Shown: positions 25,060 through 44,190, counted from the first letter of the stretch. The stretch: DNA of 64,000 nucleotides from Oikopleura dioica (GCA_907165135.1 OU015568.1:6944001-7008000); one strand, 5' to 3'. The notes: generated by a model not told the origin, from the sequence alone. Numbers and translations are program-made.

Positions 25060-28000
25060 TTACAAAAGGAAATAAGCTAGAATTGCAAGAACAGCAGAAC
25101 AAATAGTGCCTATCGATTGAGCGCTGTTTTCATCATCGTCTTCTTCAGCTGCTTCAATCAAGTCAGGGCTGACAATGGACCATTCGGAACTGATCTTAAT
25201 GCCGCTCAAATCGATCGTGACTGTATTTCCGGAGAAGGTGGAGCTCACGGCTTGACCGTTGACCAGGACGGTGGTCAATCGTCGCTCAACACCAACGATG
25301 ACGAATTTTTCGATATCAAGGTCGTCTTCGCCGCCGGATACGCATCGCGCAGCTGTGCAAGAGGAAGTGAACTCGCCATTGAAGGGGTTGAAGTTGAATT
25401 TCATGTAATTGTCTCCATCTTCTTTGAGCAGTGATTCTCCATCATCCCAGAAGAGTCCTCCTTCTCTTGCCTGCGTAGGGTTGATCTTGTCCATGAAGTA
25501 AGTGATTGTAATTGGATTGTAACGCTGGGCAGCAGTCGTGACTTCAGGAGATTGCGAAGTAAGGAAGGTACCGCCTCGAGCGAAGAGTGGAATCGTCATC
25601 ATATCTGCCTGGATCAACTTAGTCTTTCCAGAACCTTCGATTTCTTCGTAGCTGTGGTAGTCGTACCACGATGCATCAGCTGGAAAGTAAACTGCTCGAC
25701 TAACGGCGTGTTCCTCCATTACTGGAGCGATCATGAAGCCACTTCCCCAAAGAAATTGATCAGAACAATCAGCTGCATTTCTATCCAGAGGGAACTCTGC
25801 CATCAACGATCTAACAGTGGTGGTTCCGAATTGGTTTGATTCGTACATGAGAGTGTACAAAGTCGGCAGGAGGGAATATCTGATGAGCAGTGCATTTCGG
25901 GACGATTCGATGACATCGTCTCCAAACATTGTTGGATGCTGATCGGCCCAACCGATTCCATTATGATTTCTCGAGTAAGGGTAAAACGCTCCGAGTTGCT
26001 GCCATCTCTGGCACATTGGTGCAGTAGCCGCGAACCAAAAGCCGCAAATGTCAGCTCCAGTGTAAGAGAAACCAAAGAGTGAGTATTCAAGCATTCCAGT
26101 GATACTCCATTGCATCTGGCGCCACTGACTTTGGTTATCTCCGAGCCAATGTCCTGCTACGCGTCCGGTACCGGCGAATTGAGATCTTGTCAAGATGAAT
26201 GATCGTTTATCTGGGTAGAGGGCTTTCAAAGTCTTGTCGGTAACGAGAGCCATAGAATGGCCGTAAAGTGAGTGGACGTCGTAGTGTTTTCCCCAAGCTT
26301 GGACTCCATCCATGCAGATGGTTTTCCAGAAAAGACCTTTGTCTGCATCAAGAACGTTAGGAGTGAAAGGTGGGTTGCTCCACTGATCCGGGCACTGAAG
26401 GTTTCCGTTGTCAGTCATAAAACTCGCTGGTTCATTCATGTCGATCCACAGAGCATCGTACTGAACACCCTCGTCATCGAGGAATCTTCGGCACTCATCG
26501 GTCCACCAAGGCTCGGTTTTATTGATGTCGGTGAAATCAGGGAAGAGAGTTGGTCCTGGCCAAACTTCGGCTTGAGCTGGGGTCCCATCGGGATTCTTGA
26601 TCCAGACATCAGCCGCTTTCGCTCTTGCGTAAGAGGGATACTCTGCTTCTGTGTACTCTTTGCCAGTGTCAGGGTTGATGTTAGCGATGGCGGGGTCGAG
26701 GATGACGATGTAATGCATGTTGTGGACGTCATGGAGTTCCTTGACAAAGTCAGCGAGGCCGTTGTAGTTGACAGGGTCGATAGTGAAGTCTTTCTTGGCA
26801 TCCATGTAGTCAATATCACCATATTGCGCGTCAAAGGGGATTTTGGCTGCGATCATGTCTTCGACAATTCCTTTCATTTTATCAAGCGAGTCATATCCCC
26901 ATCGACTGAGTTGATATCCAAGAGACCATCGAGGAGGCAAAAATGGCTTTCCGATGATTTGTGATGTGTAAGCTTGAACGAGTTCTTCGGCCGAATCCGC
27001 AACGACGACAGAGATGTCGAAGATACCACCAGTTGATCGCCAGGTAATTGCAGGCTTGGGTGAGAACTGGGCCTCCTGAGCATTTGCGTTGTGGAAGTAG
27101 ACGCCAAAGAAGGAGTTGCCTTCGCCGCACATGAAAAATGGCTGAGCTCCGTAGAAGTTCCATTCGTCGATTGGAGCTACATCTCTGGTGAACATCGCCC
27201 ATCGTTGCCAGTTGAGAGTGTGTCTAAATCGTCGGTGATTATGCTCTCCGAGACCGTAGCAGTTGTATGAACCAAGAGCAAAGCTAGTTTCCAAATATTG
27301 ATGTTCAAAGATCAAGGGTCCGTGAGAAGAGTCAATCAAAGTCTGTTCGTCTCGTTTTATCTTGAAGAAGAATCTGTCATTTTGATTTCCGTATTCGACG
27401 GAGTAGTCTGATTCGGATGTGCTGCCTTCAAATGGAAGTTGATGGATGTCTGCTTCATCTGGAATTTCGAAGCGACCCTCGGCGAAAATCTTCATTCGGA
27501 AAGCGTTTTTCGATAGCTTGACCATTGTCACTTCTGGATTCGCAACTGGCTCGGAGAATTTTCTGGCAGAATTGAGCTCAGCGGGTCTGGAGAGTGAAAA
27601 AGTCTCGCTAGCACCAGACAAAGTTCCAGATTTAGAGGCAGTGTAGCCATGATTGACTTTTGAAGAATCATGAATGCACCAAGGAGCATCAGAAGTTGTT
27701 GGCAATTCTGACCAAGTACAACCCTTTGCAGCGCATTCATTCGGACCAATGTTTTCTTGGCCTGGAGTGCAGTCGATTCGATCGTTGACATCTCCGACGA
27801 TAATGCTAATATCGAACTGTTGAATGATGCTCAAATTGACGAAGCCGTCTTTGATGACAAGTCTGTTTGATTCTTCCTGTTGCCATGCTGCTTTCTCCAA
27901 AGCTTCGCCGTTGATGATGACATCGCTGACGGCGCCATCAAGACCGTTGAATTCGAAATGTGTAAATTCAAGTGGATTTTCTGTTCCGTAATTCTCGTGG

Positions 28001-31000
28001 ATTTCAGTGTCGATTTCTCCCATCTTGACTGATGATTGAAGCTGGTTGTGGTGGAATTCGAATTCGACGAGAGTGTACTCGCCATTGTTGATTGGATCGA
28101 TGGAGTTTCCTGTATCCCAGTACAGATCGCCGGAAGCTTTACCATCTTCGTCGAGATTGACGATGAGGCCGAGAGGATTGATTCGAGAGTCCATTGTCGT
28201 TTGGGAAGGAACTTGAACGGGAACAACTGAGCCACCTTGGAAGAAAAGGGGAATGACGTCAATAGGAGCAGCAACATTATTCCATCCATCAGCAGATCGT
28301 TCGATTTCAAAGCCGTTATCGTAATTGTACCATCGAGCTTCAGGGAAGTATGTTGGCTTGACAGTTTGACCTTCCTCAAGGACGGGCGAGAACATAACGC
28401 CGGATCCCCACTGCATTTGTTCGTCGATGTCCCAGGTTGTTTTGTCACTTGGGAAATTGTTCATGAGCGGGCGAACAACAGTATCACCGTGCTTGTGAGC
28501 TCGGTAGAGAAGGGTGTACAAATATGGAAGCATTCGGTATCGTTTTGTGAGAGCAGACTTTTTCATGATCAAAATTTGACATTTTCAAGTTATTGGTTAT
28601 CTTATCAAGACCATTTCCTTTGAAAGCTCGACGAAGTCTTCATCCCATGAAGCAGGATCCTGTCGTCTGTTAGTCAAGCCATTGTGATTTCTCGAATAAG
28701 GGAAGAAAGCTCCAAGCTCCATCCATCGAGCGCACATTTCTCGTTCAGCTTCTGAGAAGAACCCACAAGTATCTGGGCCAGTGTAGCTAGGCAAAGTTTA
28801 TTGGAAATTCGACATGAAAATCCACCTGAATCCGAATAAAGAAAAGTGCATCGAAGCAACCATACTCTGCTTCACATGGCGCCAGATCGAAGAGTTATCC
28901 CCATGCCAATGGCCGATGGTTTTCTGTGAGCCGGGATAGGTGGATCGAGAAACGATCAAACATCGTTTTCCAAGGGTTTTCTCACAAGAATCAAGAGTAG
29001 GCTGACCTTCGGAGTATCCGTAAAGGCTATGCATGTCGTAGTGATTTTCCATCTCACCAGTCAACGGGTTGTATTGTTGACCATCCATGCAAATTGTCCT
29101 GAGTTGTTTTTATAAAGAGAAAATTTAATAGCGATCTTACTTTTCGAAAAGACTGACATTTTCCGGATCGCGTCCCTCTCGCAAGGAAGTTGGAATGTAG
29201 GGCGGTCGGTTGAGATTGTTATTTGGGCAGCCATCAAGTCCCTTTTTTGAAGTTAGTTTTTTTTAGATTCTTTCTTAAAACAACCTGAGTGCCGCCGTTG
29301 AGCTCTGGTCGACCAGCAGTAAAACTCGCTGGCTCATTCATATCAATCCAGATGCCATCGTAGGAAAGTCCAGTTCCGTTCTTGAAGAAATTCTTTGTGA
29401 AGACTTGGATCTCTTCATCCCACCATTCGGCAGTTTGTGGCGCGAAGAAGTCAGGGAAAGCAACGTTTGAATGAAATTTGGCAACGTTTTCGTCCCAGCC
29501 ATTTCCATCTTGAACGAGATCTTCAAGGTAGATGCCGGGCCAGTAGGGCCAGACCTGAAGTGCTGTGTTAACTGTTTGTTCATCGAACTTGGCCTCTTTG
29601 AAAAAGTTTGATGACCAGTGAAATGTTATGTAAGAAGGGGTAACGAAAAGTTTACCTTGCCCATTTCGATCTCTCCGTCTGTTCCTCTAATGTAAACATC
29701 CTTGTCAAGACCTTTCTGATAAGTCGGGTAGATGACTCCATCTTTATCGCGCCACGATTCCGCCTGATTTTGGTTTGGATCGTGTTCTCCTGCCGAAATC
29801 GCTGGGTCGAAAATGAGAATGAATCGCATGTTGTACTCCTTTTTGATGTAGTCAATGTAGTCAGGAAGCCCAGAAAAGTGCTCCTCGCTCAGGGTGAAGT
29901 CCAACTGTCGTTCCATGTAATCAATATCGGCATATTGCGTATCGTAGGGAATTCCCGCATCGCGATTTTCTTCGACGACGGTGATGATTTCCGAGGTGTT
30001 TTGATAACCGTATCGGCAGAGCTGGAAACCGAGCGACCAGTAGGGGAAAAGATAGCTTCTTCCGAGGTAGTGAGTGTATTGCTGAGTGACGGCTTCAGGT
30101 CCTGGACCAGTAAAGAGCATGAAATCAAGCTCGCCACCGATAGTTCTGTACGTGATCGCCGGCTTGGGAGTTGAAATGACTTCCATAGCGTTGGCGTTAA
30201 AAAACAGGAGGCCGGATGCATTTCCATCGTCCTCGAAGGTCATGTGATAAGGCTGGACGCCGTAGAGATTGTCGCCAGTTCCAACGCCGTTGTCTCGCGC
30301 CCACATTCCTTGGGCATGCCAGTTGTCCTGGAACTTCAAGGCGCCTTGTTCGGTCTCGCCGAAGCCATAAGTGTAGGTCGAAGGGCGTTTCACGGAGAGC
30401 TCGAGGAATTGATCGTAAAAGAGGAGAGGCGCTACGGAGGTATCAAAGAGAACCTCGCCCGTGGATCGTCGAGTGATCTTCACCCAGAATCTGCTTCCCG
30501 GCTGAGCGGTTTCAACGATGTAATCCAACCCTGGTTGTTCGTTGTCCTTGTCCATGTCAGTTCCTGGGTTGAGTGGCTCGGCGATAGGGACGGGAACTTT
30601 GAATCGATCATCAGCTTCGTTGGTGATGCGAACTCGGACTGTAGTGCGATCTACATCGTAGATTACCATTTTGAGTTTCTGTTGCTGGTTTGGGTAGCTG
30701 TCTTTCGTCGCGGATGATTCAAGAGAAAGGGAGTATTCTCTGGTTTGGACTTGCTTTGATCCCCATTCCGTAAAACCATCTTTTTTGGGTTAGACTCTTG
30801 TCCATTTTATACAAAAAAACAAGATGGAAAAGGGCTAACTTTCCTGTTACAGAATCCAACTTGTAGTGAGCATAATCCTGCGGAAACACGCACCAGGGTG
30901 CTCCTTCGATTGAAGACGGTTCCCAAAGACATCCTCTGGCCTCGCATTTTTGCTGATCCGAACCATGATCCGGCATGCAATTGAATCGGTCATTATCCGC

Positions 31001-31087
31001 TATCGTCGGTGTATCATTCTCGCGATTCTGCAGCTGGTTCAACGATCCGTATGCCGTCACAGCCAAGAGGCTGCTCGACAACTTCAT
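25060..31087 (-). CDS. MGAM-like: Two-module GH31 alpha-glucosidase (maltase-glucoamylase/sucrase-isomaltase-like) with trefoil domains
   Basis: Signal peptide [14 protein letters not shown]; P-type trefoil ([17 protein letters not shown]) before each module; both modules have the catalytic WIDMNEP motif plus HWxGDN and G[AP]DxCGF; six introns; hydrophobic C-terminal tail. Confidence 0.92.
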
Positions 31088-33850: not shown

Positions 33851-36800
33851 ATGGCTTAGAGCATCATCAGAGCAATCATGAGTACCGCCTGCCTATTTTA
33901 CAGTAAATGGCTTAGAGCATCATCAGAGCAATCATGAGTACCGCCTGCCTATTTTACAGTAAATGGCTTAGAGCATCATCAGAGCAATCATGAGTACCGC
34001 CTGCCTATTTTACAGTAAATGGCTTAGAGCATCATCAGAGCAATCATGAGTACCGCCTGCCTATTTTACAGTAAATGGCTTAGAGCATCATCAGAGCAAT
34101 CATGAGTACCGCCTGCCTATTTTACAGTAAATGGCTTAGAGCATCATCAGAGCAATCATGAGTACCGCCTGCCTATTTTACAGTAAATGGCTTAGAGCAT
34201 CATCAGAGCAATCATGAGTACCGCCTGCCTATTTTACAGTAAATGGCTTAGAGCATCATCAGAGCAATCATGAGTACCGCCTGCCTATTTTACAGTAAAT
34301 GGCTTAGAGCATCATCAGAGCAATCATGAGTACCGCCTGCCTATTTTACAGTAAATGGCTTAGAGCATCATCAGAGCAATCATGAGTACCGCCTGCCTAT
34401 TTTACAGTAAATGGCTTAGAGCATCATCAGAGCAATCATGAGTACCGCCTGCCTATTTTACAGTAAATGGCTTAGAGCATCATCAGAGCAATCATGAGTA
34501 CCGCCTGCCTATTTTACAGTAAATGGCTTAGAGCATCATCAGAGCAATCATGAGTACCGCCTGCCTATTTTACAGTAAATGGCTTAGAGCATCATCAGAG
34601 CAATCATGAGTACCGCCTGCCTATTTTACAGTAAATGGCTTAGAGCATCATCAGAGCAATCATGAGTACCGCCTGCCTATTTTACAGTAAATGGCTTAGA
34701 GCATCATCAGAGCAATCATGAGTACCGCCTGCCTATTTTACAGTAAATGGCTTAGAGCATCATCAGAGCAATCATGAGTACCGCCTGCCTATTTTACAGT
34801 AAATGGCTTAGAGCATCATCAGAGCAATCATGAGTACCGCCTGCCTATTTTACAGTAAATGGCTTAGAGCATCATCAGAGCAATCATGAGTACCGCCTGC
34901 CTATTTTACAGTAAATGGCTTAGAGCATCATCAGAGCAATCATGAGTACCGCCTGCCTATTTTACAGTAAATGGCTTAGAGCATCATCAGAGCAATCATG
35001 AGTACCGCCTGCCTATTTTACAGTAAATGGCTTAGAGCATCATCAGAGCAATCATGAGTACCGCCTGCCTATTTTACAGTAAATGGCTTAGAGCATCATC
35101 AGAGCAATCATGAGTACCGCCTGCCTATTTTACAGTAAATGGCTTAGAGCATCATCAGAGCAATCATGAGTACCGCCTGCCTATTTTACAGTAAATGGCT
35201 TAGAGCATCATCAGAGCAATCATGAGTACCGCCTGCCTATTTTACAGTAAATGGCTTAGAGCATCATCAGAGCAATCATGAGTACCGCCTGCCTATTTTA
35301 CAGTAAATGGCTTAGAGCATCATCAGAGCAATCATGAGTACCGCCTGCCTATTTTACAGTAAATGGCTTAGAGCATCATCAGAGCAATCATGAGTACCGC
35401 CTGCCTATTTTACAGTAAATGGCTTAGAGCATCATCAGAGCAATCATGAGTACCGCCTGCCTATTTTACAGTAAATGGCTTAGAGCATCATCAGAGCAAT
35501 CATGAGTACCGCCTGCCTATTTTACAGTAAATGGCTTAGAGCATCATCAGAGCAATCATGAGTACCGCCTGCCTATTTTACAGTAAATGGCTTAGAGCAT
35601 CATCAGAGCAATCATGAGTACCGCCTGCCTATTTTACAGTAAATGGCTTAGAGCATCATCAGAGCAATCATGAGTACCGCCTGCCTATTTTACAGTAAAT
35701 GGCTTAGAGCATCATCAGAGCAATCATGAGTACCGCCTGCCTATTTTACAGTAAATGGCTTAGAGCATCATCAGAGCAATCATGAGTACCGCCTGCCTAT
35801 TTTACAGTAAATGGCTTAGAGCATCATCAGAGCAATCATGAGTACCGCCTGCCTATTTTACAGTAAATGGCTTAGAGCATCATCAGAGCAATCATGAGTA
35901 CCGCCTGCCTATTTTACAGTAAATGGCTTAGAGCATCATCAGAGCAATCATGAGTACCGCCTGCCTATTTTACAGTAAATGGCTTAGAGCATCATCAGAG
36001 CAATCATGAGTACCGCCTGCCTATTTTACAGTAAATGGCTTAGAGCATCATCAGAGCAATCATGAGTACCGCCTGCCTATTTTACAGTAAATGGCTTAGA
36101 GCATCATCAGAGCAATCATGAGTACCGCCTGCCTATTTTACAGTAAATGGCTTAGAGCATCATCAGAGCAATCATGAGTACCGCCTGCCTATTTTACAGT
36201 AAATGGCTTAGAGCATCATCAGAGCAATCATGAGTACCGCCTGCCTATTTTACAGTAAATGGCTTAGAGCATCATCAGAGCAATCATGAGTACCGCCTGC
36301 CTATTTTACAGTAAATGGCTTAGAGCATCATCAGAGCAATCATGAGTACCGCCTGCCTATTTTACAGTAAATGGCTTAGAGCATCATCAGAGCAATCATG
36401 AGTACCGCCTGCCTATTTTACAGTAAATGGCTTAGAGCATCATCAGAGCAATCATGAGTACCGCCTGCCTATTTTACAGTAAATGGCTTAGAGCATCATC
36501 AGAGCAATCATGAGTACCGCCTGCCTATTTTACAGTAAATGGCTTAGAGCATCATCAGAGCAATCATGAGTACCGCCTGCCTATTTTACAGTAAATGGCT
36601 TAGAGCATCATCAGAGCAATCATGAGTACCGCCTGCCTATTTTACAGTAAATGGCTTAGAGCATCATCAGAGCAATCATGAGTACCGCCTGCCTATTTTA
36701 CAGTAAATGGCTTAGAGCATCATCAGAGCAATCATGAGTACCGCCTGCCTATTTTACAGTAAATGGCTTAGAGCATCATCAGAGCAATCATGAGTACCGC

Positions 36801-36996
36801 CTGCCTATTTTACAGTAAATGGCTTAGAGCATCATCAGAGCAATCATGAGTACCGCCTGCCTATTTTACAGTAAATGGCTTAGAGCATCATCAGAGCAAT
36901 CATGAGTACCGCCTGCCTATTTTACAGTAAATGGCTTAGAGCATCATCAGAGCAATCATGAGTACCGCCTGCCTATTTTACAGTAAATGGCTTAGA
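33851..36996. repeat. Tandem satellite of ~56 apparently identical 56-bp units (AATGGCTTAGAGCATCATCAGAGCAATCATGAGTACCGCCTGCCTATTTTACAGTA)
   Basis: 4-nt phase shift per 60-nt line gives a period of 56; no spacers. Degenerate partial units at 33721-33825. Confidence 0.97.
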
Positions 36997-37588
36997 AACA
37001 GCGGCTTAAGGCCCGATTTTCGGACTGACAGACTCTCCCGCCGATTAAATAGGTATTTGACTCTGCCTGTCCCCATCCCCACCCACACCCATTTTTATAA
37101 AAACTCCAGTAGATTTAGAAGATCAGAGCTTTACGGTTTCTTAATTTGCGGAAATCCAAAATCTGGAAATGAAGAAATGGAAGAAGAAATCTGGAAATGA
37201 AGAAATTGAAGGAGAATCTGGAAATGAAGAAGTGAAGAGAGATTAATTTCAGTTTAAATAAAGTTTTAAAAGATTTATCGACATTTTGAAAGCTATTGAT
37301 TTGAGAAATTAAGATTTTTATTAATCATTCATTTCATTTTTTAAGTTGTTTAACGCTTACGTTATCTTTCACTTGCCAAAAAATGCTCGAAACTACTTTG
37401 ATTTGCTTTTCGCATGATTTTGCGAGTTACCGATCATTTTTGCTAGGTGCGATTATCATTTCAAAAGAGAAAGATGAACTTACCATAGACAATAAAGAAA
37501 AAAAGGAAAGGGTCCAAAGTTGCCGTCGTTTGGACCCTGTGAGAGACTTTTATAAATCTGACTAACTAAAACTTACAATATATTCCAG

Positions 37589-40500
37589 GATTTTGGATCG
37601 GTGGCTACGATGAGCATGAAGAATGGTTCCCCTCAATTCCCGACAACGAATTGCTCCCTGATCGACCCGACAATGGTTATCTTGGAGGTCAGTGGGGCTG
37701 GTCGAACGACATGCCTTGGAATTACGTGAACTGGGATTACGGACAGCCACAAAATCAAGGCTCAGATGACTGCGTCATGCTCAGAACTATCGATGGAAAA
37801 TGGGAGGACTTTGCTTGCACAGCTAGACTCAAAGGAATTTGCGAAAAGCGTTCAAAATCTTACAAACCGCCAGAGGACTCCTTCCCAACTTGCAAGGACG
37901 ATTCTTGTTGCAACGGTCATCTCGGAGTCGAATACGGAGGCAAAATCGCTCCCAAGAGCTTTTCATCTTCTCCAACTTTGGAAGGATACGAATGGAACAC
38001 TCGAGCACAATTTGGGCGACTAAACCAGCCAAATAAGCTCATCGATCTCAACGGCCTCAAACCAGGCAACGATGCTGCTGGAGGTTGGGTTTCTGCAGAG
38101 AGCGAGAAGAATCCCTGGTGGGCTGTGACGTTCTATGATTCTGATACTGCTTCAAAGCCATTTATCGCCGAAGTCCGTGGAATCATGACCCAGGGTCTTG
38201 CTGGTTTCAAAGCCATTCCGAAGTGGAAGCGATACACGAAAACGTATCAAGTTCAGTACGAAACGCACGATGGCGGCATGGAATACTTCTACGACAGCAA
38301 AGGAGAAATCATCACTTTCGATGGAAACTATGACAAGGACAATATTGTGACCAACTTCTTCCCTTACCCAGTTTTCACTAGAAAGATCCGAGTGATTCCA
38401 AAAACCTGGCGAACAGGTGCTGCTCTGCGAGTTGAACTGATCGGCTGCAAAAGTGGCTGTATGCACTCACTTGGTGTTTGCCAAGATCGAATTGTCAACG
38501 GAGAGAGCCCAATCAACATCATCTCCGATTCCGACATCACTGCAAGTTCAGAAGTAGCTGGCTCTGAGGCTAAAAACGCTCGACTATGCTACGACAACAA
38601 CAACTGCAAAGAACGTAACACGCCGACCAAGAAAACATACCAAGTTTACACACAAAAATCTTCATATGACAGTGCGAAGGGCAAATGCGGAAATCAACAA
38701 GGAGGTGCTGGCGTTCTTGGAGCAATTCTCAACGATAATGATCAGCAAAGTGTCCAAAGCAAAGTCCAAACTTCTTCAAATCCCGGACAAGGTGAATGCT
38801 ACTGGATTGGTCTTTCTCGACAATCCGGCCAGTGGCTTTGGGATGATGGCAGTTCTCTTACTTATGAGAATTGGGTTGCAAATGATGGTCGAAATAATGC
38901 ATGTGTCTGCATGTCTGTTGATCAACAGTTCAAATGGACAACACGCGATTGCAAAGAAGTCATGCCATATGTTTGCCAGCGAACTGAAACTGGAAAGGTC
39001 TGGGTTGCCGAGACCGCTACTGTTAACGAGTGGCTGATGGTTGATCTCGGATCTATTATGCGAATCACTGGTATCTTTACTCAAGGAGATCCACTTGGAG
39101 AAAACTGGGTCACAGAATACAGTCTTGCTTTCTCCGACAAGAACCTCAATGACTGGCACGATTATCTAAACCACGAAGGAACCGCTGTCGTCCGCTTCCG
39201 TGGCAACCACGACAGCCATGGAATCGGCGAAGGAATTCTCCGACAACCAGTTACTGCTCGTTATGTTAAAGTCAAACCGCTTAGCTGGAAGAACAGAATT
39301 GCTATGAGAATCGACATCATCGGATGCAAAACCTCACAGTCTGGTAAAATCGGATGTCAAGATAACGGACAGTCATTGGCAGAATATGGAAGTGCCATCA
39401 CTGTTGAATGCCCGCACGATTGCGATCAGGTCACTCCGGTCAATGTTTATGGAACGACAAAGTACTCGCTGGAATCAAGCGTCTGCCAAGCTGCAATTCA
39501 CGACAGTCGTGTTCAAGCTCACAACGGTGGAACCGTATCGCTCAAATTCATCGACAACACGGCGGATTTCATTGGAACAGAAGCGCATGGAATCGAATCA
39601 AATGACAGAGATGCAGAAGACCAAGCAATGATCTTCCAAAGCGATCACCTCGGTTGCGAAGAAGGCTGGGTCAAATACAGAGACATGTGTTACTACCAAC
39701 CAGCACGTGCAAATGGAAACAAAAAGCGATGGTCTGAAGCAAGAGCAATTTGCACTGAACTCGGAGGCGATCTGGCTGTGATTCCAGATAAGGCAACATC
39801 TGACTTTATTTATGCCATGATCAGAAACAATGATGACTTGAATCATGTGTGGCTTGGATTGACTGATAATGGGCATCCGAATTACTACGAAAAATGGGTT
39901 GACGACACTCCAGTTACTTTCACCAACTGGGACAGAAATCGACCAAGCTTTCATTCTGGCAACGAATGTGTTCTTGCTTACCGAGCAAGTTTCCTTTGGC
40001 ACTCAGATGACTGCAACAGAAACACAAACTATATTTGCCAGCGGCCAGTTGCTCCTACTAATCATGTCGACAAGGAAGAAGGCTGTCCTCCTGACGGATG
40101 GATTCGATTCGGAACAAAATGCTACAAATTCATGATGCAACAAGAGATCTACGTCCACGCTGAACTCAAATGCAATGGCATGATTGCAGGTCAGTCATCG
40201 CTCGTTACTGTTCCTGATAGTGCTACAAACGCTTGGCTTCATGCAAAGGTCGTTGAACTTGTTCATGCTAACGATCACACCAACTTCTGGATCGGTCTTC
40301 ACGGACAAAGCTACTCTTCTGGCCAAAATGGAACTACAATCGAATATCTCTGGGCTTCCGGAGAGTGCCCAAGCTACACAAACTGGAAAACTGGTGAACC
40401 TGGAATCAGCACTCAGTGTGTTTTCCCATTCAAATACAAGGCTCCTGGTACTGCTTTGACCAAAACATACTATGATTGCGTCGATGATCCTGAAGATCTT

Positions 40501-43500
40501 TGGTATCAAAACATTGGCGGTCCATGGTGTTCTGGAACAGATGATTTCAACCGAGATCATGAATTCTTGCCCTGCAGTGAGGACTTTTTCTACCAAGGAT
40601 GTGCGATCATGAGCCGCGAAAACGGACAGTGGTATTCCGATTGGGGCGAATTCTGGGATCCAACAGACAATTCCGGCGGTCGAGGTTGTTATGATAAGCA
40701 ACACTACATCTGCGAAGTACCCGCTGAAGAAGAAGAACGACCTCCGTGTATTCCTCGTGAGCCGATTGCTGGTCCGGAATGTCTGGGCGGTGCTGACTGG
40801 GTCGGATGGGATGACGGTGAAGCTAAATCCCACGATTGCTATTTCATCCACTCGTACGTGAACGAACCAATCGATGGTCGCGATGATGGAGTCAACTTTG
40901 GTGAAGCTGATGCTTTCTGTCGATCAATGGGTGCGAATCTTGTTTCTCTTCATAACTACGACGAAAATGCTAAATTGATCGAACTCATCAAGGACAAAGA
41001 AAGAAAAGGACTCAATGTTCGAGATTCTTATTTTATCGGCTTCAACGACAGAGGTGAGCGGGGATATCAATGGACAGATGCTACAGCGGTTGACTACACT
41101 AACTGGCTTGCTGGGCAACCTGAGAAGAATGCACCAGATGAAGAATGCGCGATGACTTATTCGGGATACGTTCAAGGTCAGTGGTACTCTGATTATTGCA
41201 ATTCACACGCTGGTTTGATCTGCGGAATTACTCGAGGTAAACAGCCAGAGCCACTGCCAACTCATCCACCAACCATCCAGCCAAGTCAAGAGTGCATGAG
41301 AACTGCTAATCCAGGCGAGACCTGGTACGAGCTTGAGCATAGAGCTGACGGAAACATCAAGTGCGTGATGGTAGTTCCAAATGATTCTGGAAATCAAGAC
41401 ACAGCTAACACCAAGTGCGCAAATCTTGGCGACGGAGGAACTTTGATCTCAATTCATCATAAAGAAGAGCTGTCGCAGTTGACAAAGATCTTACGTCAGG
41501 ACCCAAGTTATGATCAACCAGCTTATTGGATCGGTTTGCGATACAAATACGATTACTCTGATTACTTGACGAAATGGCGTTGGCTTGATGGTTCTCCCGT
41601 CGACTACGACAATTACGCTGAAGGAAATCCAAAAGACAACCAATATCTTTACGATGCAACTGTCATGCACAACGACGGACGATGGTTCACTGAAGACTAT
41701 CTAACCTCGTTCCCTTTTATTTGCCAGCGATGGCCACAAGGAGCACCAACTGCGCCTCCAGAGCCCGAGAGAAACGGTGGATGTCCGAAAGATTGGTACG
41801 ACTTTAAAAATCGCTGCTATAAGTTTTCCGGAAAGCGAGGAGCTACCGAGGAGCACTTGTCTTTTGACATGGCTGGTTTCAAATGTAGAGAACAAGAAGG
41901 AGCTCCAGAAGGGCAGTACGCTGAGCTGGCATCGGTCCCGGATGCAACTTACGACAACTTCGTCTTCGGCCATTTATATGACTCTCACGGGGCAGTCTGG
42001 CTAGGAGGCGATGCTAATCAAGCAAGAGAATGGTCTTGGCTTGATCAAACTCCCTGGGTTTTTAGCTATTGGGCCAATGGAGAACCAAATAATGCTAACA
42101 ACAACGAGTACTGCTTGTCAATGATGGTTGCAGAAAACAACGGTCGATGGAACGATGCTAATTGTCTCGATGAAAAACCATTTGTCTGCTCAATGTTCAA
42201 GGATCCATCACTTCCGGCGCCAAGTCCACCAAATCCCCACAATTGCCCAGCAGATTACAAGCCGCTTGGCGATCACTGCTATAAAGTCGTTGATAATCAA
42301 ATGGACTACGAAGCAGCAAAGGCTTCATGCGCGAATTCCGCAAGTGGATTTGGCTATGCTGGTCTTGCAACTATTCTGGACGTTCATGACAATGCCTACC
42401 TTACAGCTCTTATCAACGAGGGATCTTACACATCTGACAGCTACTGGATTGGTCTTTACACTGACAAGAATGTCGTCAATACTAATGGAACTGTCTGGCT
42501 CTGGGAGGACAATCGACCTGTCTCTTTCACAAAATGGGCAAATGGATCCCCCGTCGAACCAGCTGGAGACAAATCTTGTGTCAAAATGCAGGGTAGCGGA
42601 AGATGGGTTCAAGAAGACAACTGTAACACTGCTGCTAAATCGATCTGTAAGTTAGAGAAAAACTATAAACCAGAAAATCACGACAACCCGGGCGAAGAAC
42701 GATGTGACCCAGAATGGTGGGGATATGGCGGATACTGCTACATCTTCCGAACTGGCTGGGAGGCTACCGAGTACTGGGAAACTTCCGAAGAATGGTGCGT
42801 CAGTCAAGGAGCACATCTTGCTTCGATCAGAGATGATGAGGAGAGACGAGCACTTGCAGCAAAGAGCAACGAGGATCTTTGGATCGGACTTCGACGAGAT
42901 GAATCAAATGCATTTTCTGAGTGGTCTGACGGATCTGCACTAGCCTACACAGCTTGGATGCCTGGTGAGCCAAACGACGGCGGTGCATCTGGCATTTCAG
43001 AACCTTGTGCATTTATGAACAGCCAAGGGCTTTGGAACGATGTCACCTGTAATAACTGGAAGGGGTATGTTTGTAAGAAACCAGCTCAGATGTCTTTCTG
43101 CTCGGTTCCAATTGAGCAGCGTCATGACTGTGGATACTATGGAATCCAGCAGGACGAATGCATCGGCTACGGTTGTTGCTGGAGCCCCGTCGAGGATGGA
43201 CCCGGCTACTGGTGCTTCCATCCAAACAACAATGTCGAATGCTTGGAACAAGGAGGCCGATGTATTCCACGTGGCAAGGTTCACAATTGCGATCGAGGTG
43301 TCGTCGAAGGAATCTGTTCCAACGATGGCCACGGCGGAAATGATCAAGGCTCGGTTAACTCGCATGAAATATAAAAAACAATCTATTTTATTATTTGATA
43401 AGTCATGCGATTACCCGGAGCAGTTTGCTGCAAATCTTGCACTGATTCTCCCAAAGAATGCAAGGCGGAAGAAGATGAGTGGAGCAAGCAAGATACAGAA

Positions 43501-44190
43501 TGCGTTTTAGCTGGCGGAAAGTGCATTTTCGAAGGAAATGAGTGTAGAAACTTCATCAAGCCAGAACTGGGTTGCGGAGGTCCTAGTGATAGACAATGCT
43601 GTGCTCCTAACGTAAGCAAATGTTGAATTTTTAGAGTTCATTCGAGATTTAGAGCCCACCAACTCCAATGCCAACAACTACACACGAGACTGTGAAAACA
43701 ACTCAAACAACAAAACCAGAAGGATCTGGTGCAAATGTAGGAGCCATCGTCGCTGGTGTTTTCGTCGCCATTGTTGTTGTCGGTGCAGTTGGTCTTTACA
43801 TCGTTAAGCAGGGCAACCCACTTGGTCATCAGCAGCAGAGCTTCCAAAATCCTGGCAATGCTGGAAACGTCGATGGAGTTGTGGATGGACATGATAATCC
43901 TCTTCAGGTAAATTCGCTCGTTTTCATCTACAGCTGAGAATCTCCTTCAGGATAACGCAGACGACGACAATGGTAGCCCCGGCGGTGCAAGCGAGCCAGT
44001 AGCAACTGTCACAACTACAGAAAGCTTCAACGACACATATGCTTCCCCCGTAGAAACTCCAGCAGCACCAGCTCAACAAGAGAACGTCTACGACAGTCTG
44101 GACATTCTCGGCGAATCAACTGAGCCAGCTGCTCCTACAGCAACGACTGTATCAATTGACAACGATACCACAACGGATCTACTTTTCTAA
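37589..44190 (+). CDS. Giant type I membrane multi-C-type-lectin receptor (mannose-receptor-like) with 2 FA58C/discoidin, LCCL, FN2, trefoil and defensin-like Cys repeats; 5' exon(s) not found
   Basis: About nine CTLDs (WIGL, EPN..WND in two), FA58C motifs (ITGIFTQG, ARYVKVKPLSW..MRIDIIGC), LCCL (VYGT..Y..SSVCQAAIH), trefoil (CGYYGI..EC..GCCW..WCF), TM VGAIVAGVFVAIVVVGAVGLYIV, and a cytoplasmic tail with NVYDSL. Confidence 0.88.

What the first reader, a model, noticed from the sequence alone, without database searches (positions are those of the whole stretch)
40078..40713. Fibronectin type II domain inserted in the sugar-binding loop of a CTLD
This CTLD runs to YTNWKTGEPG, the EPN-equivalent position. 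An FN2 module follows (40417-40575: CVFPFKY..YYDC..GPWCSGTDDFNRD..LPC), then the CTLD resumes (GCAIM..GQW..C..KQHYICE). In mannose-receptor family proteins FN2 is a separate N-terminal domain. Here it replaces the Ca2+/sugar loop, so this module may bind collagen-like ligands. This is the second nested insertion in the same intron-free exon.
Basis: partly seen in the sequence, partly recalled or inferred. Interest (0 to 1): 0.7.

Follow-up and report, generated by a model that had tools for sequence, protein, structure and literature searches.

The report
FN2 module nested inside a C-type lectin domain
A fibronectin type II module sits inside the ligand-binding loop of one C-type lectin domain of a large Oikopleura membrane receptor; sea squirts have the same nested module, while the equivalent domain of amphioxus and fish has only a short loop, so it is an old tunicate invention at the usual sugar-binding site.

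Summary
Window 40078-40716 (+) encodes one C-type lectin-like domain (CTLD). It is interrupted after its EPG motif (the EPN position) by a complete four-cysteine FN2 module (40417-40575). The CTLD then resumes with strands beta3-beta5.

Evidence for a real nested domain:
- Pfam scores fn2 above its cut-off.
- AlphaFold2 folds the two CTLD halves into one complete CTLD (Z 19.2, 127 of 135 residues of 1jzn_A).
- The FN2 piece, folded alone, matches only FN2 structures.
- The module is under strong purifying selection against a diverged O. dioica lineage.

The module is not an Oikopleura oddity. A paralog in the same genome has it, as do Ciona, Styela and Clavelina. The orthologous CTLD of amphioxus, of teleosts and of an FN2-less Clavelina paralog has a 5-6 residue loop there and keeps a QPD/WDD calcium-site signature. 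All FN2-bearing copies have lost that signature.

A phase-1 intron shared with amphioxus marks the 5' edge of the insert in ascidians. This suggests exon shuffling in the tunicate stem.

The ligand is untested. I found no paper describing this architecture. I rate it a new variant of a known kind, of moderate interest.

The parts
37589..43374 (+). Large single exon (open frame of 1907 codons from 37651) of a multi-domain receptor gene. Order of domains: partial CTLD, discoidin, discoidin with a nested CTLD, LCCL, CTLD, CTLD with nested FN2, five more CTLDs, trefoil.
   Evidence: ORF list and translation. Pfam. The 3' splice acceptor AG ends at 37588. The 90%-identical ortholog in O. dioica GCA_000209555.1 is also annotated as one exon.
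40078..40404 (+). N-terminal part of the host CTLD: beta1, the two helices, WIGL strand, long-loop region up to YTNWKTGEPG (EPG at the EPN position).
   Evidence: Lectin_C profile 3-83 of 107. PDB CTLD sequence matches all stop at query residues 107-115. pLDDT is mostly 86-98, with a dip to 71 at residues 81-90.
40405..40416 (+). Four-residue entry linker ISTQ between EPG and the first FN2 cysteine. It corresponds to the place of a conserved phase-1 intron in ascidians and amphioxus.
   Evidence: Alignments. Intron mapping.
40417..40575 (+). Fibronectin type II module, 53 residues, four cysteines (CVFPFKY..YYDC..PWC..FLPC). It has two short lineage-specific loop extensions relative to the 43-residue ascidian version.
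   Evidence: Pfam fn2 1-42 of 42, 24.8 and 30.4 bits against cut-off 22.2. Alignment with canonical FN2s shows C5, C25, W41, C42 and C57 conserved. AF2 of the piece alone gives pLDDT 83.6. All top 50 Foldseek hits are FN2 modules. pN is 0.067 against saturated pS.
40576..40596 (+). Exit linker SEDFFYQ from the FN2 back to the CTLD.
   Evidence: Alignments.
40597..40716 (+). C-terminal part of the host CTLD: beta3 (GCAIM), beta4 (GQW), a larvacean-specific loop of about 14 residues (DWGEFWDPTDNSGGRG), and beta5 with the last two cysteines (C..HYICE).
   Evidence: Complete CTLD structures superpose on model residues 1..213 (Z 19.2, rmsd 1.7 A, 127 of 135 residues of 1jzn_A). The extra loop is the only stretch with pLDDT below 50 (198-201). 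pN is 0.017.
43728..43805 (+). Predicted transmembrane helix (GANVGAIVAGVFVAIVVVGAVGLYIV) in a downstream exon, followed by a short tail with F-Q-N-P. This makes the product a type I membrane protein like its ascidian and amphioxus relatives. Exon borders were not determined.
   Evidence: Frame translation. The C-termini of the Styela, Ciona and amphioxus proteins have the same layout: TM, then GF[DE]NP or GFDNALY.

Best explanation
SHOWN. This is a true nested domain. A complete FN2 module is inserted in the loop between the EPN-position motif (here EPG) and strand beta3 of one CTLD, the second CTLD after the LCCL domain. The host is a large type I membrane protein made of multiple CTLDs, discoidin, LCCL and trefoil domains. 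The two CTLD halves fold together around the excursion. The FN2 therefore projects from the face where classical C-type lectins hold calcium and sugar. The module is conserved in Oikopleura (an ortholog, a paralog, and unnamed marine-metagenome fragments) and in ascidians (Ciona x2, Styela x2, Clavelina). It is absent from the orthologous CTLD of amphioxus, of teleosts and of an FN2-less Clavelina paralog.

INFERRED, about 0.6. The FN2 entered by exon shuffling into a pre-existing phase-1 intron of the tunicate-stem gene. That intron lies right after the [EQ]P codon and is still shared by amphioxus, Ciona and Styela. Oikopleura later lost all these introns.

INFERRED, about 0.4. The host CTLD has given up calcium-dependent sugar binding: its WND-position residues became W-x-hydrophobic in every FN2-bearing copy. 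It now serves as a rigid pedestal that presents the aromatic pocket of the FN2. That pocket would bind a proline-rich or collagen-like peptide, or a choline-like group, on a cell-surface, possibly endocytic, receptor.
For: Domain calls: Pfam fn2 is above cut-off and Lectin_C is truncated at profile position 83.

Fold: the AF2 model of the module has pLDDT 85.7 and pTM 0.77. Whole single CTLDs align over model residues 1..213 with Z 17.6-19.2 and rmsd 1.4-2.6 A, covering 114-132 residues. Foldseek TM-scores normalised by the target are 0.69-0.81. The FN2 modelled alone has pLDDT 83.6, and its 50 best PDB matches are all FN2 modules: factor XII FnII, PDC-109, MMP-2, Endo180, MR, DEC-205, and the IGF2R insert.

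Selection: against the Norwegian O. dioica ortholog there are no indels in the module, pN is 0.06 and pS is saturated at about 0.8-1.0.

Conservation: a paralog at G000:C1:5043545 has the same layout. So do Styela XP_039270230 and Ciona LOC100186027 and LOC100175664, Clavelina and a second Styela gene, and about ten metagenomic fragments.

Uninserted state: the amphioxus, teleost and FN2-less Clavelina orthologous CTLD has QPDxxxG-C and WDD. Teleost family members carry no PF00040, and my FN2 HMM finds none in them.

Introns: a phase-1 intron after the [EQ]P codon is present in B. floridae, Ciona and Styela. The FN2-bearing ascidian exon is symmetrical phase 1-1, 189 and 192 nt.

Membrane topology.

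FN2 pocket: aromatic positions are conserved.
Against: No transcript evidence for the window's lineage. The listed RNA runs gave only 2-6 partly laid reads each, mostly at 90-95% likeness, so they look like another lineage.

The ligand and the loss of calcium binding are inferred from sequence only. No coordinates could be inspected, so the orientation of the FN2 and the exposure of its pocket are unknown.

Ascidians have no intron at the 3' edge of the FN2: the exon runs on through beta3. A simple insertion of one exon therefore needs a later intron loss.

Foldseek E-values for the small FN2 model are weak (0.008-0.2), although probabilities are 0.69-1.0 (at least 0.92 for 48 of the 50) and every hit is an FN2.

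The 5' exons and signal peptide of the window gene were not found.
Confidence: 0.8

Rival explanations
1. The FN2 is not itself the ligand site. It is a structural or regulatory insert that packs against a neighbouring domain and tunes that domain's binding or the receptor's conformation.
For: From prior knowledge, not tested here: in IGF2R the FN2 insert of domain 13 is said to raise the IGF-II affinity of domain 11. IGF2R structures are among the fold matches of the FN2 model (2v5o, 2v5p, 6um1). The same genome has a CI-MPR-like gene with an FN2 insert. The receptor has 9-12 other CTLDs, some with intact EPN motifs, that could do the binding.
Against: The aromatic positions that line the FN2 pocket in collagen- and choline-binding FN2s are kept from larvaceans to ascidians. 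This is more than a spacer would need. No inter-domain model was made.
Confidence: 0.25
2. The host CTLD still binds glycans without calcium or through a secondary site. The FN2 adds a second specificity, giving a bivalent composite site for a glycosylated, proline-rich partner such as a mucin or a collagen.
For: Calcium-independent CTLDs are among the structural matches: SPL-1 (6a7t, 6m5m), type II antifreeze protein (2zib) and lithostathine. The protein ends in a trefoil domain. From prior knowledge, trefoil domains are associated with mucins.
Against: EPG replaces EPN, and W-Y-S or W-x-[LMIV] replaces WND in all FN2-bearing copies. No positive evidence for sugar binding.
Confidence: 0.12
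3. The nested appearance is an artefact: an unspliced intron or a mis-assembly read through in frame, or two truncated, decaying domains lying side by side.
For: No RNA reads cover the region in the runs available. Oikopleura has many short introns.
Against: There are no stops and no indels. Amino-acid identity is 90% against saturated synonymous change over the whole module, in an independent assembly of a diverged lineage. The same arrangement appears in annotated spliced proteins of Ciona, Styela and Clavelina. The AF2 model is a confident single fold.
Confidence: 0.02

Closest known systems
Mannose receptor family (group VI CTLD proteins: MRC1, MRC2/Endo180, LY75/DEC-205, PLA2R1)
   Same: Type I membrane proteins that combine one FN2 with many tandem CTLDs. 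The amphioxus relatives carry a tail motif GFDNALY; from memory, the mannose receptor tail has a similar FENTLY motif. NCBI's automatic names for the tunicate proteins are 'lymphocyte antigen 75-like' and 'macrophage mannose receptor 1-like'.
   Different: In that family the FN2 is a free-standing N-terminal domain after a ricin-type domain (FN2 at residues about 163-222; PF00652). Here there is no ricin domain, the FN2 lies inside a CTLD in mid-protein, and discoidin, LCCL and trefoil domains are present.
LCCL/discoidin multi-CTLD receptor of amphioxus and teleosts (predicted as 'DEC-205-FUSE' in Fugu, Zelensky and Gready 2004, PMC514892)
   Same: Same gene family and same order of domains: CTLDs, discoidin, LCCL, CTLDs, TM. 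The FN2-bearing CTLD has a clear positional ortholog, the second CTLD after LCCL, with shared D-x-[FY]-EQ-x-F and C-EK-x-R-x-G-[YF] flanks and a shared phase-1 intron.
   Different: Those proteins have a SUEL lectin domain, no Kringle and no FN2. Their orthologous CTLD has a 5-6 residue loop and keeps QPD/WDD.
FN2 insert in domain 13 of the cation-independent mannose-6-phosphate/IGF2 receptor
   Same: A single FN2 nested in a loop of another extracellular domain of a large type I receptor. It is a structural match of the FN2 model (2v5o, 2v5p, 6um1). A CI-MPR-like gene with an FN2 insert exists in this genome.
   Different: The host fold is an MRH domain, not a CTLD. From prior knowledge, that insert is not at the host's own ligand site.
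Gelatinases MMP-2 and MMP-9
   Same: FN2 modules inserted within another domain (the catalytic domain). From prior knowledge they confer gelatin and collagen binding. They are structural matches (1cxw, 1ks0, 1j7m, 1ck7, 1l6j).
   Different: There are three tandem FN2s, in an enzyme rather than a lectin fold.

Membership tests
Fibronectin type II domain (Pfam PF00040) | Profile match over the whole model at or above the gathering score | tested here: met
   Profile 1-42 of 42. 24.8 bits in the whole ORF and 30.4 bits for the piece, against a cut-off of 22.2. Ascidian orthologs score 30-32 bits.
Fibronectin type II domain (Pfam PF00040) | Four cysteines at the canonical positions, with the FPF, WC and later aromatic positions | tested here: met
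   In alignment A3, C25, W41 and C42 are invariant, and C5, P8, F9 and C57 are nearly so. Aromatic residues are kept at the Y/F/W positions. Disulfide pairing itself is not testable here.
Fibronectin type II domain (Pfam PF00040) | FN2 fold | tested here: met
   AF2 pLDDT is 83.6. All 50 best Foldseek PDB matches are FN2 modules. TM-scores normalised by the query are 0.46-0.58; against the seven stand-alone FN2 targets, TM-scores normalised by the target are 0.58-0.70; rmsd is 2.1-3.5 A for most hits. E-values are weak because the domain is small.
C-type lectin-like domain (Pfam PF00059) | Complete CTLD fold with its conserved cysteines | tested here: met
   The N-terminal part matches profile 3-83 with 27 bits against 22.6. 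The model superposes on whole CTLDs across residues 1..213, Z 19.2, rmsd 1.7 A, 127 of 135 residues. Cysteines are present at the aligned positions.
Calcium-dependent carbohydrate-recognition domain (classical C-type lectin) | EPN or QPD motif plus WND motif supplying the ligands of calcium site 2 | tested here: not met
   The window copy has EPG and W-Y-S. Ascidian copies have EPD, QPD, QPS or QPQ with W-x-[LMIV]. Uninserted orthologs keep QPD and WDD. The module is therefore a CTLD but probably not a classical sugar-binding CRD.
Mannose receptor family (group VI) | N-terminal ricin-type domain followed by a free-standing FN2 and then 8-10 CTLDs | tested here: not met
   No ricin domain in the ORF or in the full-length ascidian proteins. 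The FN2 is internal and nested. Discoidin, LCCL, Kringle and trefoil domains are present.
LCCL/discoidin multi-CTLD receptor family (amphioxus, teleosts, tunicates) | CTLDs, two discoidin domains, LCCL, CTLDs, a TM helix and a short tail, with orthologous CTLD flanks | tested here: met
   Pfam architectures. TM and tail. Orthologous CTLD alignment and shared intron. The 5' end of the window gene was not recovered.

The most novel reading that the evidence does not exclude
In stem tunicates, a galactose-type, calcium-dependent lectin site (QPD/WDD) was converted into a different kind of binding site. An FN2 module was shuffled into the intron that splits the binding loop, and the calcium ligands were then dismantled. 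The result is a composite 'CTLD pedestal plus FN2 pocket' module with no counterpart outside tunicates. The same receptor has a second loop, in its discoidin domain, that accepted different modules in different lineages: a Kringle in ascidians and a CTLD in Oikopleura. The gene would then be a natural example of loop-grafted modular receptor evolution, possibly directed at a tunicate-specific matrix ligand.
Probability: 0.3. Interest if true: 0.7.

Novelty: new variant of a known kind. Interest (0 to 1): 0.55.

Why it matters
Both CTLDs and FN2 modules are among the best-studied extracellular domains. Neither the solved structures searched by sequence nor the paper library shows another domain nested in the CTLD's ligand-binding loop.

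Three things make this case useful:
- The uninserted ancestral state survives in amphioxus and fish orthologs, alongside the inserted state.
- The intron that probably admitted the module is still present.
- The host's calcium ligands were lost in step with the insertion.

Together these make a clean natural example of how exon shuffling can re-purpose a binding site instead of merely adding a domain in series. It is also a marker for a tunicate-specific receptor subfamily. It offers a design hint as well: the CTLD long loop tolerates a 50-60 residue graft.

It does not touch a major open question, and the biology of the receptor is unknown.

Tried and rejected
RNA support. The look-up of sequencing runs listed no holder of the stretch. 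Laying three bulk and one single-cell RNA run on 37500-43450 gave only 2-6 partly laid reads per run, mostly at 90-95% likeness. The bulk-run reads lay near the trefoil end and the single-cell reads mostly near the 5' end. The runs seem to come from another O. dioica lineage. This says nothing about expression: none was listed, which does not mean none exists.

Artefact or unspliced intron. Rejected on selection, on independent assemblies and on orthologs.

A mannose-receptor family member. Rejected on architecture.

Solved structures by sequence. All CTLD matches stop at the insert, and none is nested.

Foldseek on the whole module. It lists only CTLDs, so the FN2 had to be modelled alone.

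A discrete FN2 exon in ascidians. Not found: the 3' edge of the FN2 has no intron, and the exon continues through beta3.

5' exons and signal peptide of the window gene. Not found between the neighbouring genes and the tandem array.

Spliced paralog model. The paralog's module is split by an intron. I used only its first exon, by reference, and did not join the exons for any search or fold.

Other.
Full report
**What is there**

It is part of an uninterrupted 1907-codon frame, 37651-43374 on the + strand. The exon starts at a splice acceptor that ends at 37588.

Pfam finds the following in this frame: nine Lectin_C stretches, two F5/8 type C (discoidin) domains, one LCCL, one trefoil and one fn2. 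The fn2 match is at residues 923-975, covers the whole profile, and scores 24.8 bits against a gathering score of 22.2.

On the 213-residue module, Lectin_C aligns to profile positions 3-83 of 107 and stops at the EPG motif. fn2 follows at once over its full length. The 62-residue FN2 piece alone scores 30.4 bits.

After the last FN2 cysteine and a seven-residue linker, the sequence resumes with the CTLD's beta3 (GCAIM), beta4 (GQW) and beta5 (C..HYICE). Sequence matches to solved CTLDs all end at query residues 107-115.

**Organism and selection**

The only close database relative is a partial Oikopleura dioica protein of the Norwegian assembly GCA_000209555.1. It is 90% identical over the module with no gap.

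The window's assembly has 64.3 Mb in 19 contigs. From my own knowledge this fits a chromosome-scale O. dioica assembly of another lineage.

Between the two lineages synonymous sites are saturated (pS about 0.8-1.0). Non-synonymous divergence is 0.079 in the CTLD N-part, 0.067 in the FN2 and 0.017 in the CTLD C-part. The insert is coding sequence under strong purifying selection. It is not a retained intron.

**Fold**

I built a 36-row alignment of nested homologs, ordinary CTLDs and ordinary FN2s (A2). With it, AlphaFold2 gives mean pLDDT 85.7 and pTM 0.77. Only residues 198-201, in a larvacean-specific loop, fall below 50.

Foldseek's best PDB matches are whole single CTLDs of 120-144 residues. 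They align across about 210-219 query columns, with TM-scores of 0.69-0.81 normalised by the target.

VIA-align gives Z 19.2 and rmsd 1.7 A over 127 of 135 residues of the rattlesnake lectin 1jzn_A, spanning model residues 1..213. About fifty further CTLDs score Z 17.6-18.9. The two halves therefore make one complete CTLD, with the FN2 as an excursion.

The FN2 piece modelled alone (A3; pLDDT 83.6) matches only FN2 modules among its 50 best PDB hits. These are factor XII FnII, PDC-109, the three MMP-2 modules, Endo180, MR, DEC-205, PLA2R, fibronectin and the IGF2R insert. E-values are weak (0.008-0.2), as expected for about 55 residues. Probabilities are 0.92 or more for all but two hits.

**Distribution**

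The same genome has a paralog at G000:C1:5.04 Mb. It is 35% identical and has the same order: discoidin with a nested CTLD, LCCL, CTLD, then CTLD(EPG)-Cys4 FN2-like-CTLD. An Oikopleura-type intron lies before the last strands. I used only its first exon, by reference, and did not join the exons.

An exhaustive HMMER search of 1.84 billion representatives found further nested copies:
- about ten unnamed marine-metagenome fragments, 40-60% identical, with the same junctions;
- Styela clava XP_039270230.

Word searches added Ciona intestinalis LOC100186027 and LOC100175664, Clavelina lepadiformis, a second Styela gene and one JGI protein.

The full-length ascidian proteins have a signal peptide, 11-12 CTLDs, discoidin, Kringle, LCCL, fn2 (30-32 bits), trefoil (in two of the three scanned), and, in the two whose C-terminus was read complete, a TM helix and a short tail. 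In the window, a downstream exon encodes a matching TM helix and tail.

**The uninserted state**

Amphioxus (three paralogs) and many teleosts have the same family without FN2: CTLDs, SUEL lectin, two discoidins, LCCL, CTLDs and, in the three amphioxus proteins whose C-termini I read, a TM helix. The teleost gene was predicted in Fugu in 2004 as 'DEC-205-FUSE' (PMC514892). Clavelina also has an FN2-less paralog of this type.

The second CTLD after LCCL aligns across all these taxa, with shared flanks D-x-[FY]-EQ-x-F and C-EK-x-R-x-G-[YF]. In amphioxus, stickleback, Arapaima and the FN2-less Clavelina gene the loop is QPD-x-x-x-G followed by the beta3 cysteine. In the tunicate subfamily 43-53 residues of FN2 plus a 6-8 residue linker sit exactly there.

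The uninserted orthologs of amphioxus and teleosts keep QPD and W-D-D. Every FN2-bearing copy has W-x-[LMIV], or W-Y-S in O. dioica, and the window copy has EPG. Calcium site 2 of the host CTLD has evidently been lost together with the insertion. This step is inferred from sequence.

**Origin**

I mapped the annotated proteins onto their loci: Ciona L016, amphioxus L017, Styela L018.

In all three species a phase-1 intron lies one base after the [EQ]P codon. The junctions are CCT G|gtaag...tatag|AT in amphioxus, CCA A|gtaag...ccag|GT in Ciona and CCA G|gtgga...tttag|AC in Styela.

In ascidians the next exon starts with the FN2, runs through the linker and beta3, and ends at another phase-1 intron. 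It is 189 nt in Ciona and 192 nt in Styela. Several other CTLDs of the Ciona gene have an intron in the same loop.

From established knowledge (Patthy's class 1-1 modules), FN2 modules are typically flanked by phase-1 introns. The simplest reading is therefore shuffling of an FN2 exon into this old intron in the tunicate stem, followed by loss of the intron at the 3' edge of the FN2. Oikopleura then lost all of these introns. I give this about 0.6, because the 3' intron is not observed.

**Function**

What is shown:
- the FN2 sits on the CTLD face that normally binds calcium and sugar;
- the aromatic positions of the FN2 pocket are conserved from larvaceans to ascidians;
- the calcium-site signature is gone.

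The most likely mechanism, at about 0.4, is that the CTLD acts as a pedestal and the FN2 pocket is the binding site. By analogy with the FN2s of fibronectin, MMP-2/9, Endo180 and PDC-109 (my knowledge), the ligand would be a collagen-like or proline-rich peptide or a choline-type group, bound by a membrane receptor.

Rivals: the FN2 tunes a neighbouring domain, as I recall for IGF2R domain 13 (about 0.25), or the site is a composite glycan-plus-peptide site (about 0.12). An artefact is essentially excluded.

**Comparison and novelty**

The module is a member of the fn2 and CTLD domain families. The protein is not a member of the mannose receptor family: it has no ricin domain, and its FN2 is not a free N-terminal domain. 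It belongs to the chordate LCCL/discoidin multi-CTLD receptor family.

Nested FN2s are known in MMP-2/9 and in IGF2R.

I found no paper describing an FN2, or any other domain, nested in a CTLD loop. The library lacks most subscription journals, so this is not proof of absence.

Verdict: real, conserved and apparently undescribed. It is a new variant of a known kind, with interest about 0.55.

**Limits**

- No expression data for this lineage.
- No access to model coordinates.
- The 5' exons of the window gene were not found.
- Absence outside tunicates rests on the best 150 of 200 hits of one exhaustive search, one word search and local HMM checks.

Noticed in passing
window 38458-39330 (ORF residues about 270-560); Ciona P0188 residues 922-1071; Styela P0171 residues about 915-1075: The second discoidin domain is also interrupted, in the loop after ..EAK(N/Q)AR. 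Oikopleura has a whole CTLD there. Ciona and Styela have a Kringle at the same point; in Ciona it is encoded by two exons flanked by phase-1 introns. Amphioxus has no insert there. Different modules in the same host loop in different tunicate lineages looks like an insertion hot spot or a module swap.
   Followed up: partly
window 33851-36996: A perfect tandem array, 56-bp unit x 56.2 copies at 100% identity, lies just upstream of the big exon. It is either inside the gene's 5' intron or an assembly problem. No 5' exons or signal peptide of the receptor gene were found between 32500 and 37588.
   Followed up: partly
L010 (G000:C1:10485223-10488366, minus strand), FN2 at G000:C1:10486723-10486866: A CI-MPR/IGF2R-like open frame of MRH repeats (..EWRTSAAC..) carries an FN2 insert (CHFPFSY..RPWC..FGFC; fn2 20.6 bits, below cut-off). 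This is a second nested FN2 in the same genome.
   Followed up: partly
G000:C1:5039433-5045539 (L013, L014): A paralog of the window gene has the same two nested modules. Its FN2 is too diverged for Pfam (CAPVWTYRG..). It has introns at places where the window gene has none.
   Followed up: partly
L016 (Ciona intestinalis AP043575.1:3453885-3489207): The two Ciona FN2-bearing paralogs (LOC100175664 and LOC100186027) are tandem neighbours on the same strand. A long gene on the opposite strand, whose product carries chitin-synthase and OTU Pfam hits, is annotated across the whole locus.
   Followed up: no
C-terminal tails: window about 43806-43940; P0011, P0172, P0010, P0017, P0022: The cytoplasmic tails share a short motif after the TM helix: GFDNALY or FNNLVY in amphioxus, GFDNP or GFENP in ascidians, and SFQNP and HDNP in Oikopleura. 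From memory, this resembles the tyrosine-based FENTLY internalisation motif of the mannose receptor. The tyrosine is missing in tunicates.
   Followed up: no
window 25060-31087, minus strand: There are two large open frames here. From the wording of their translations they look like glycoside-hydrolase family 31 alpha-glucosidases (sucrase-isomaltase or maltase-glucoamylase-like), each with a trefoil-like cysteine motif. They are neighbours of the receptor gene. No family scan was run on them.
   Followed up: no
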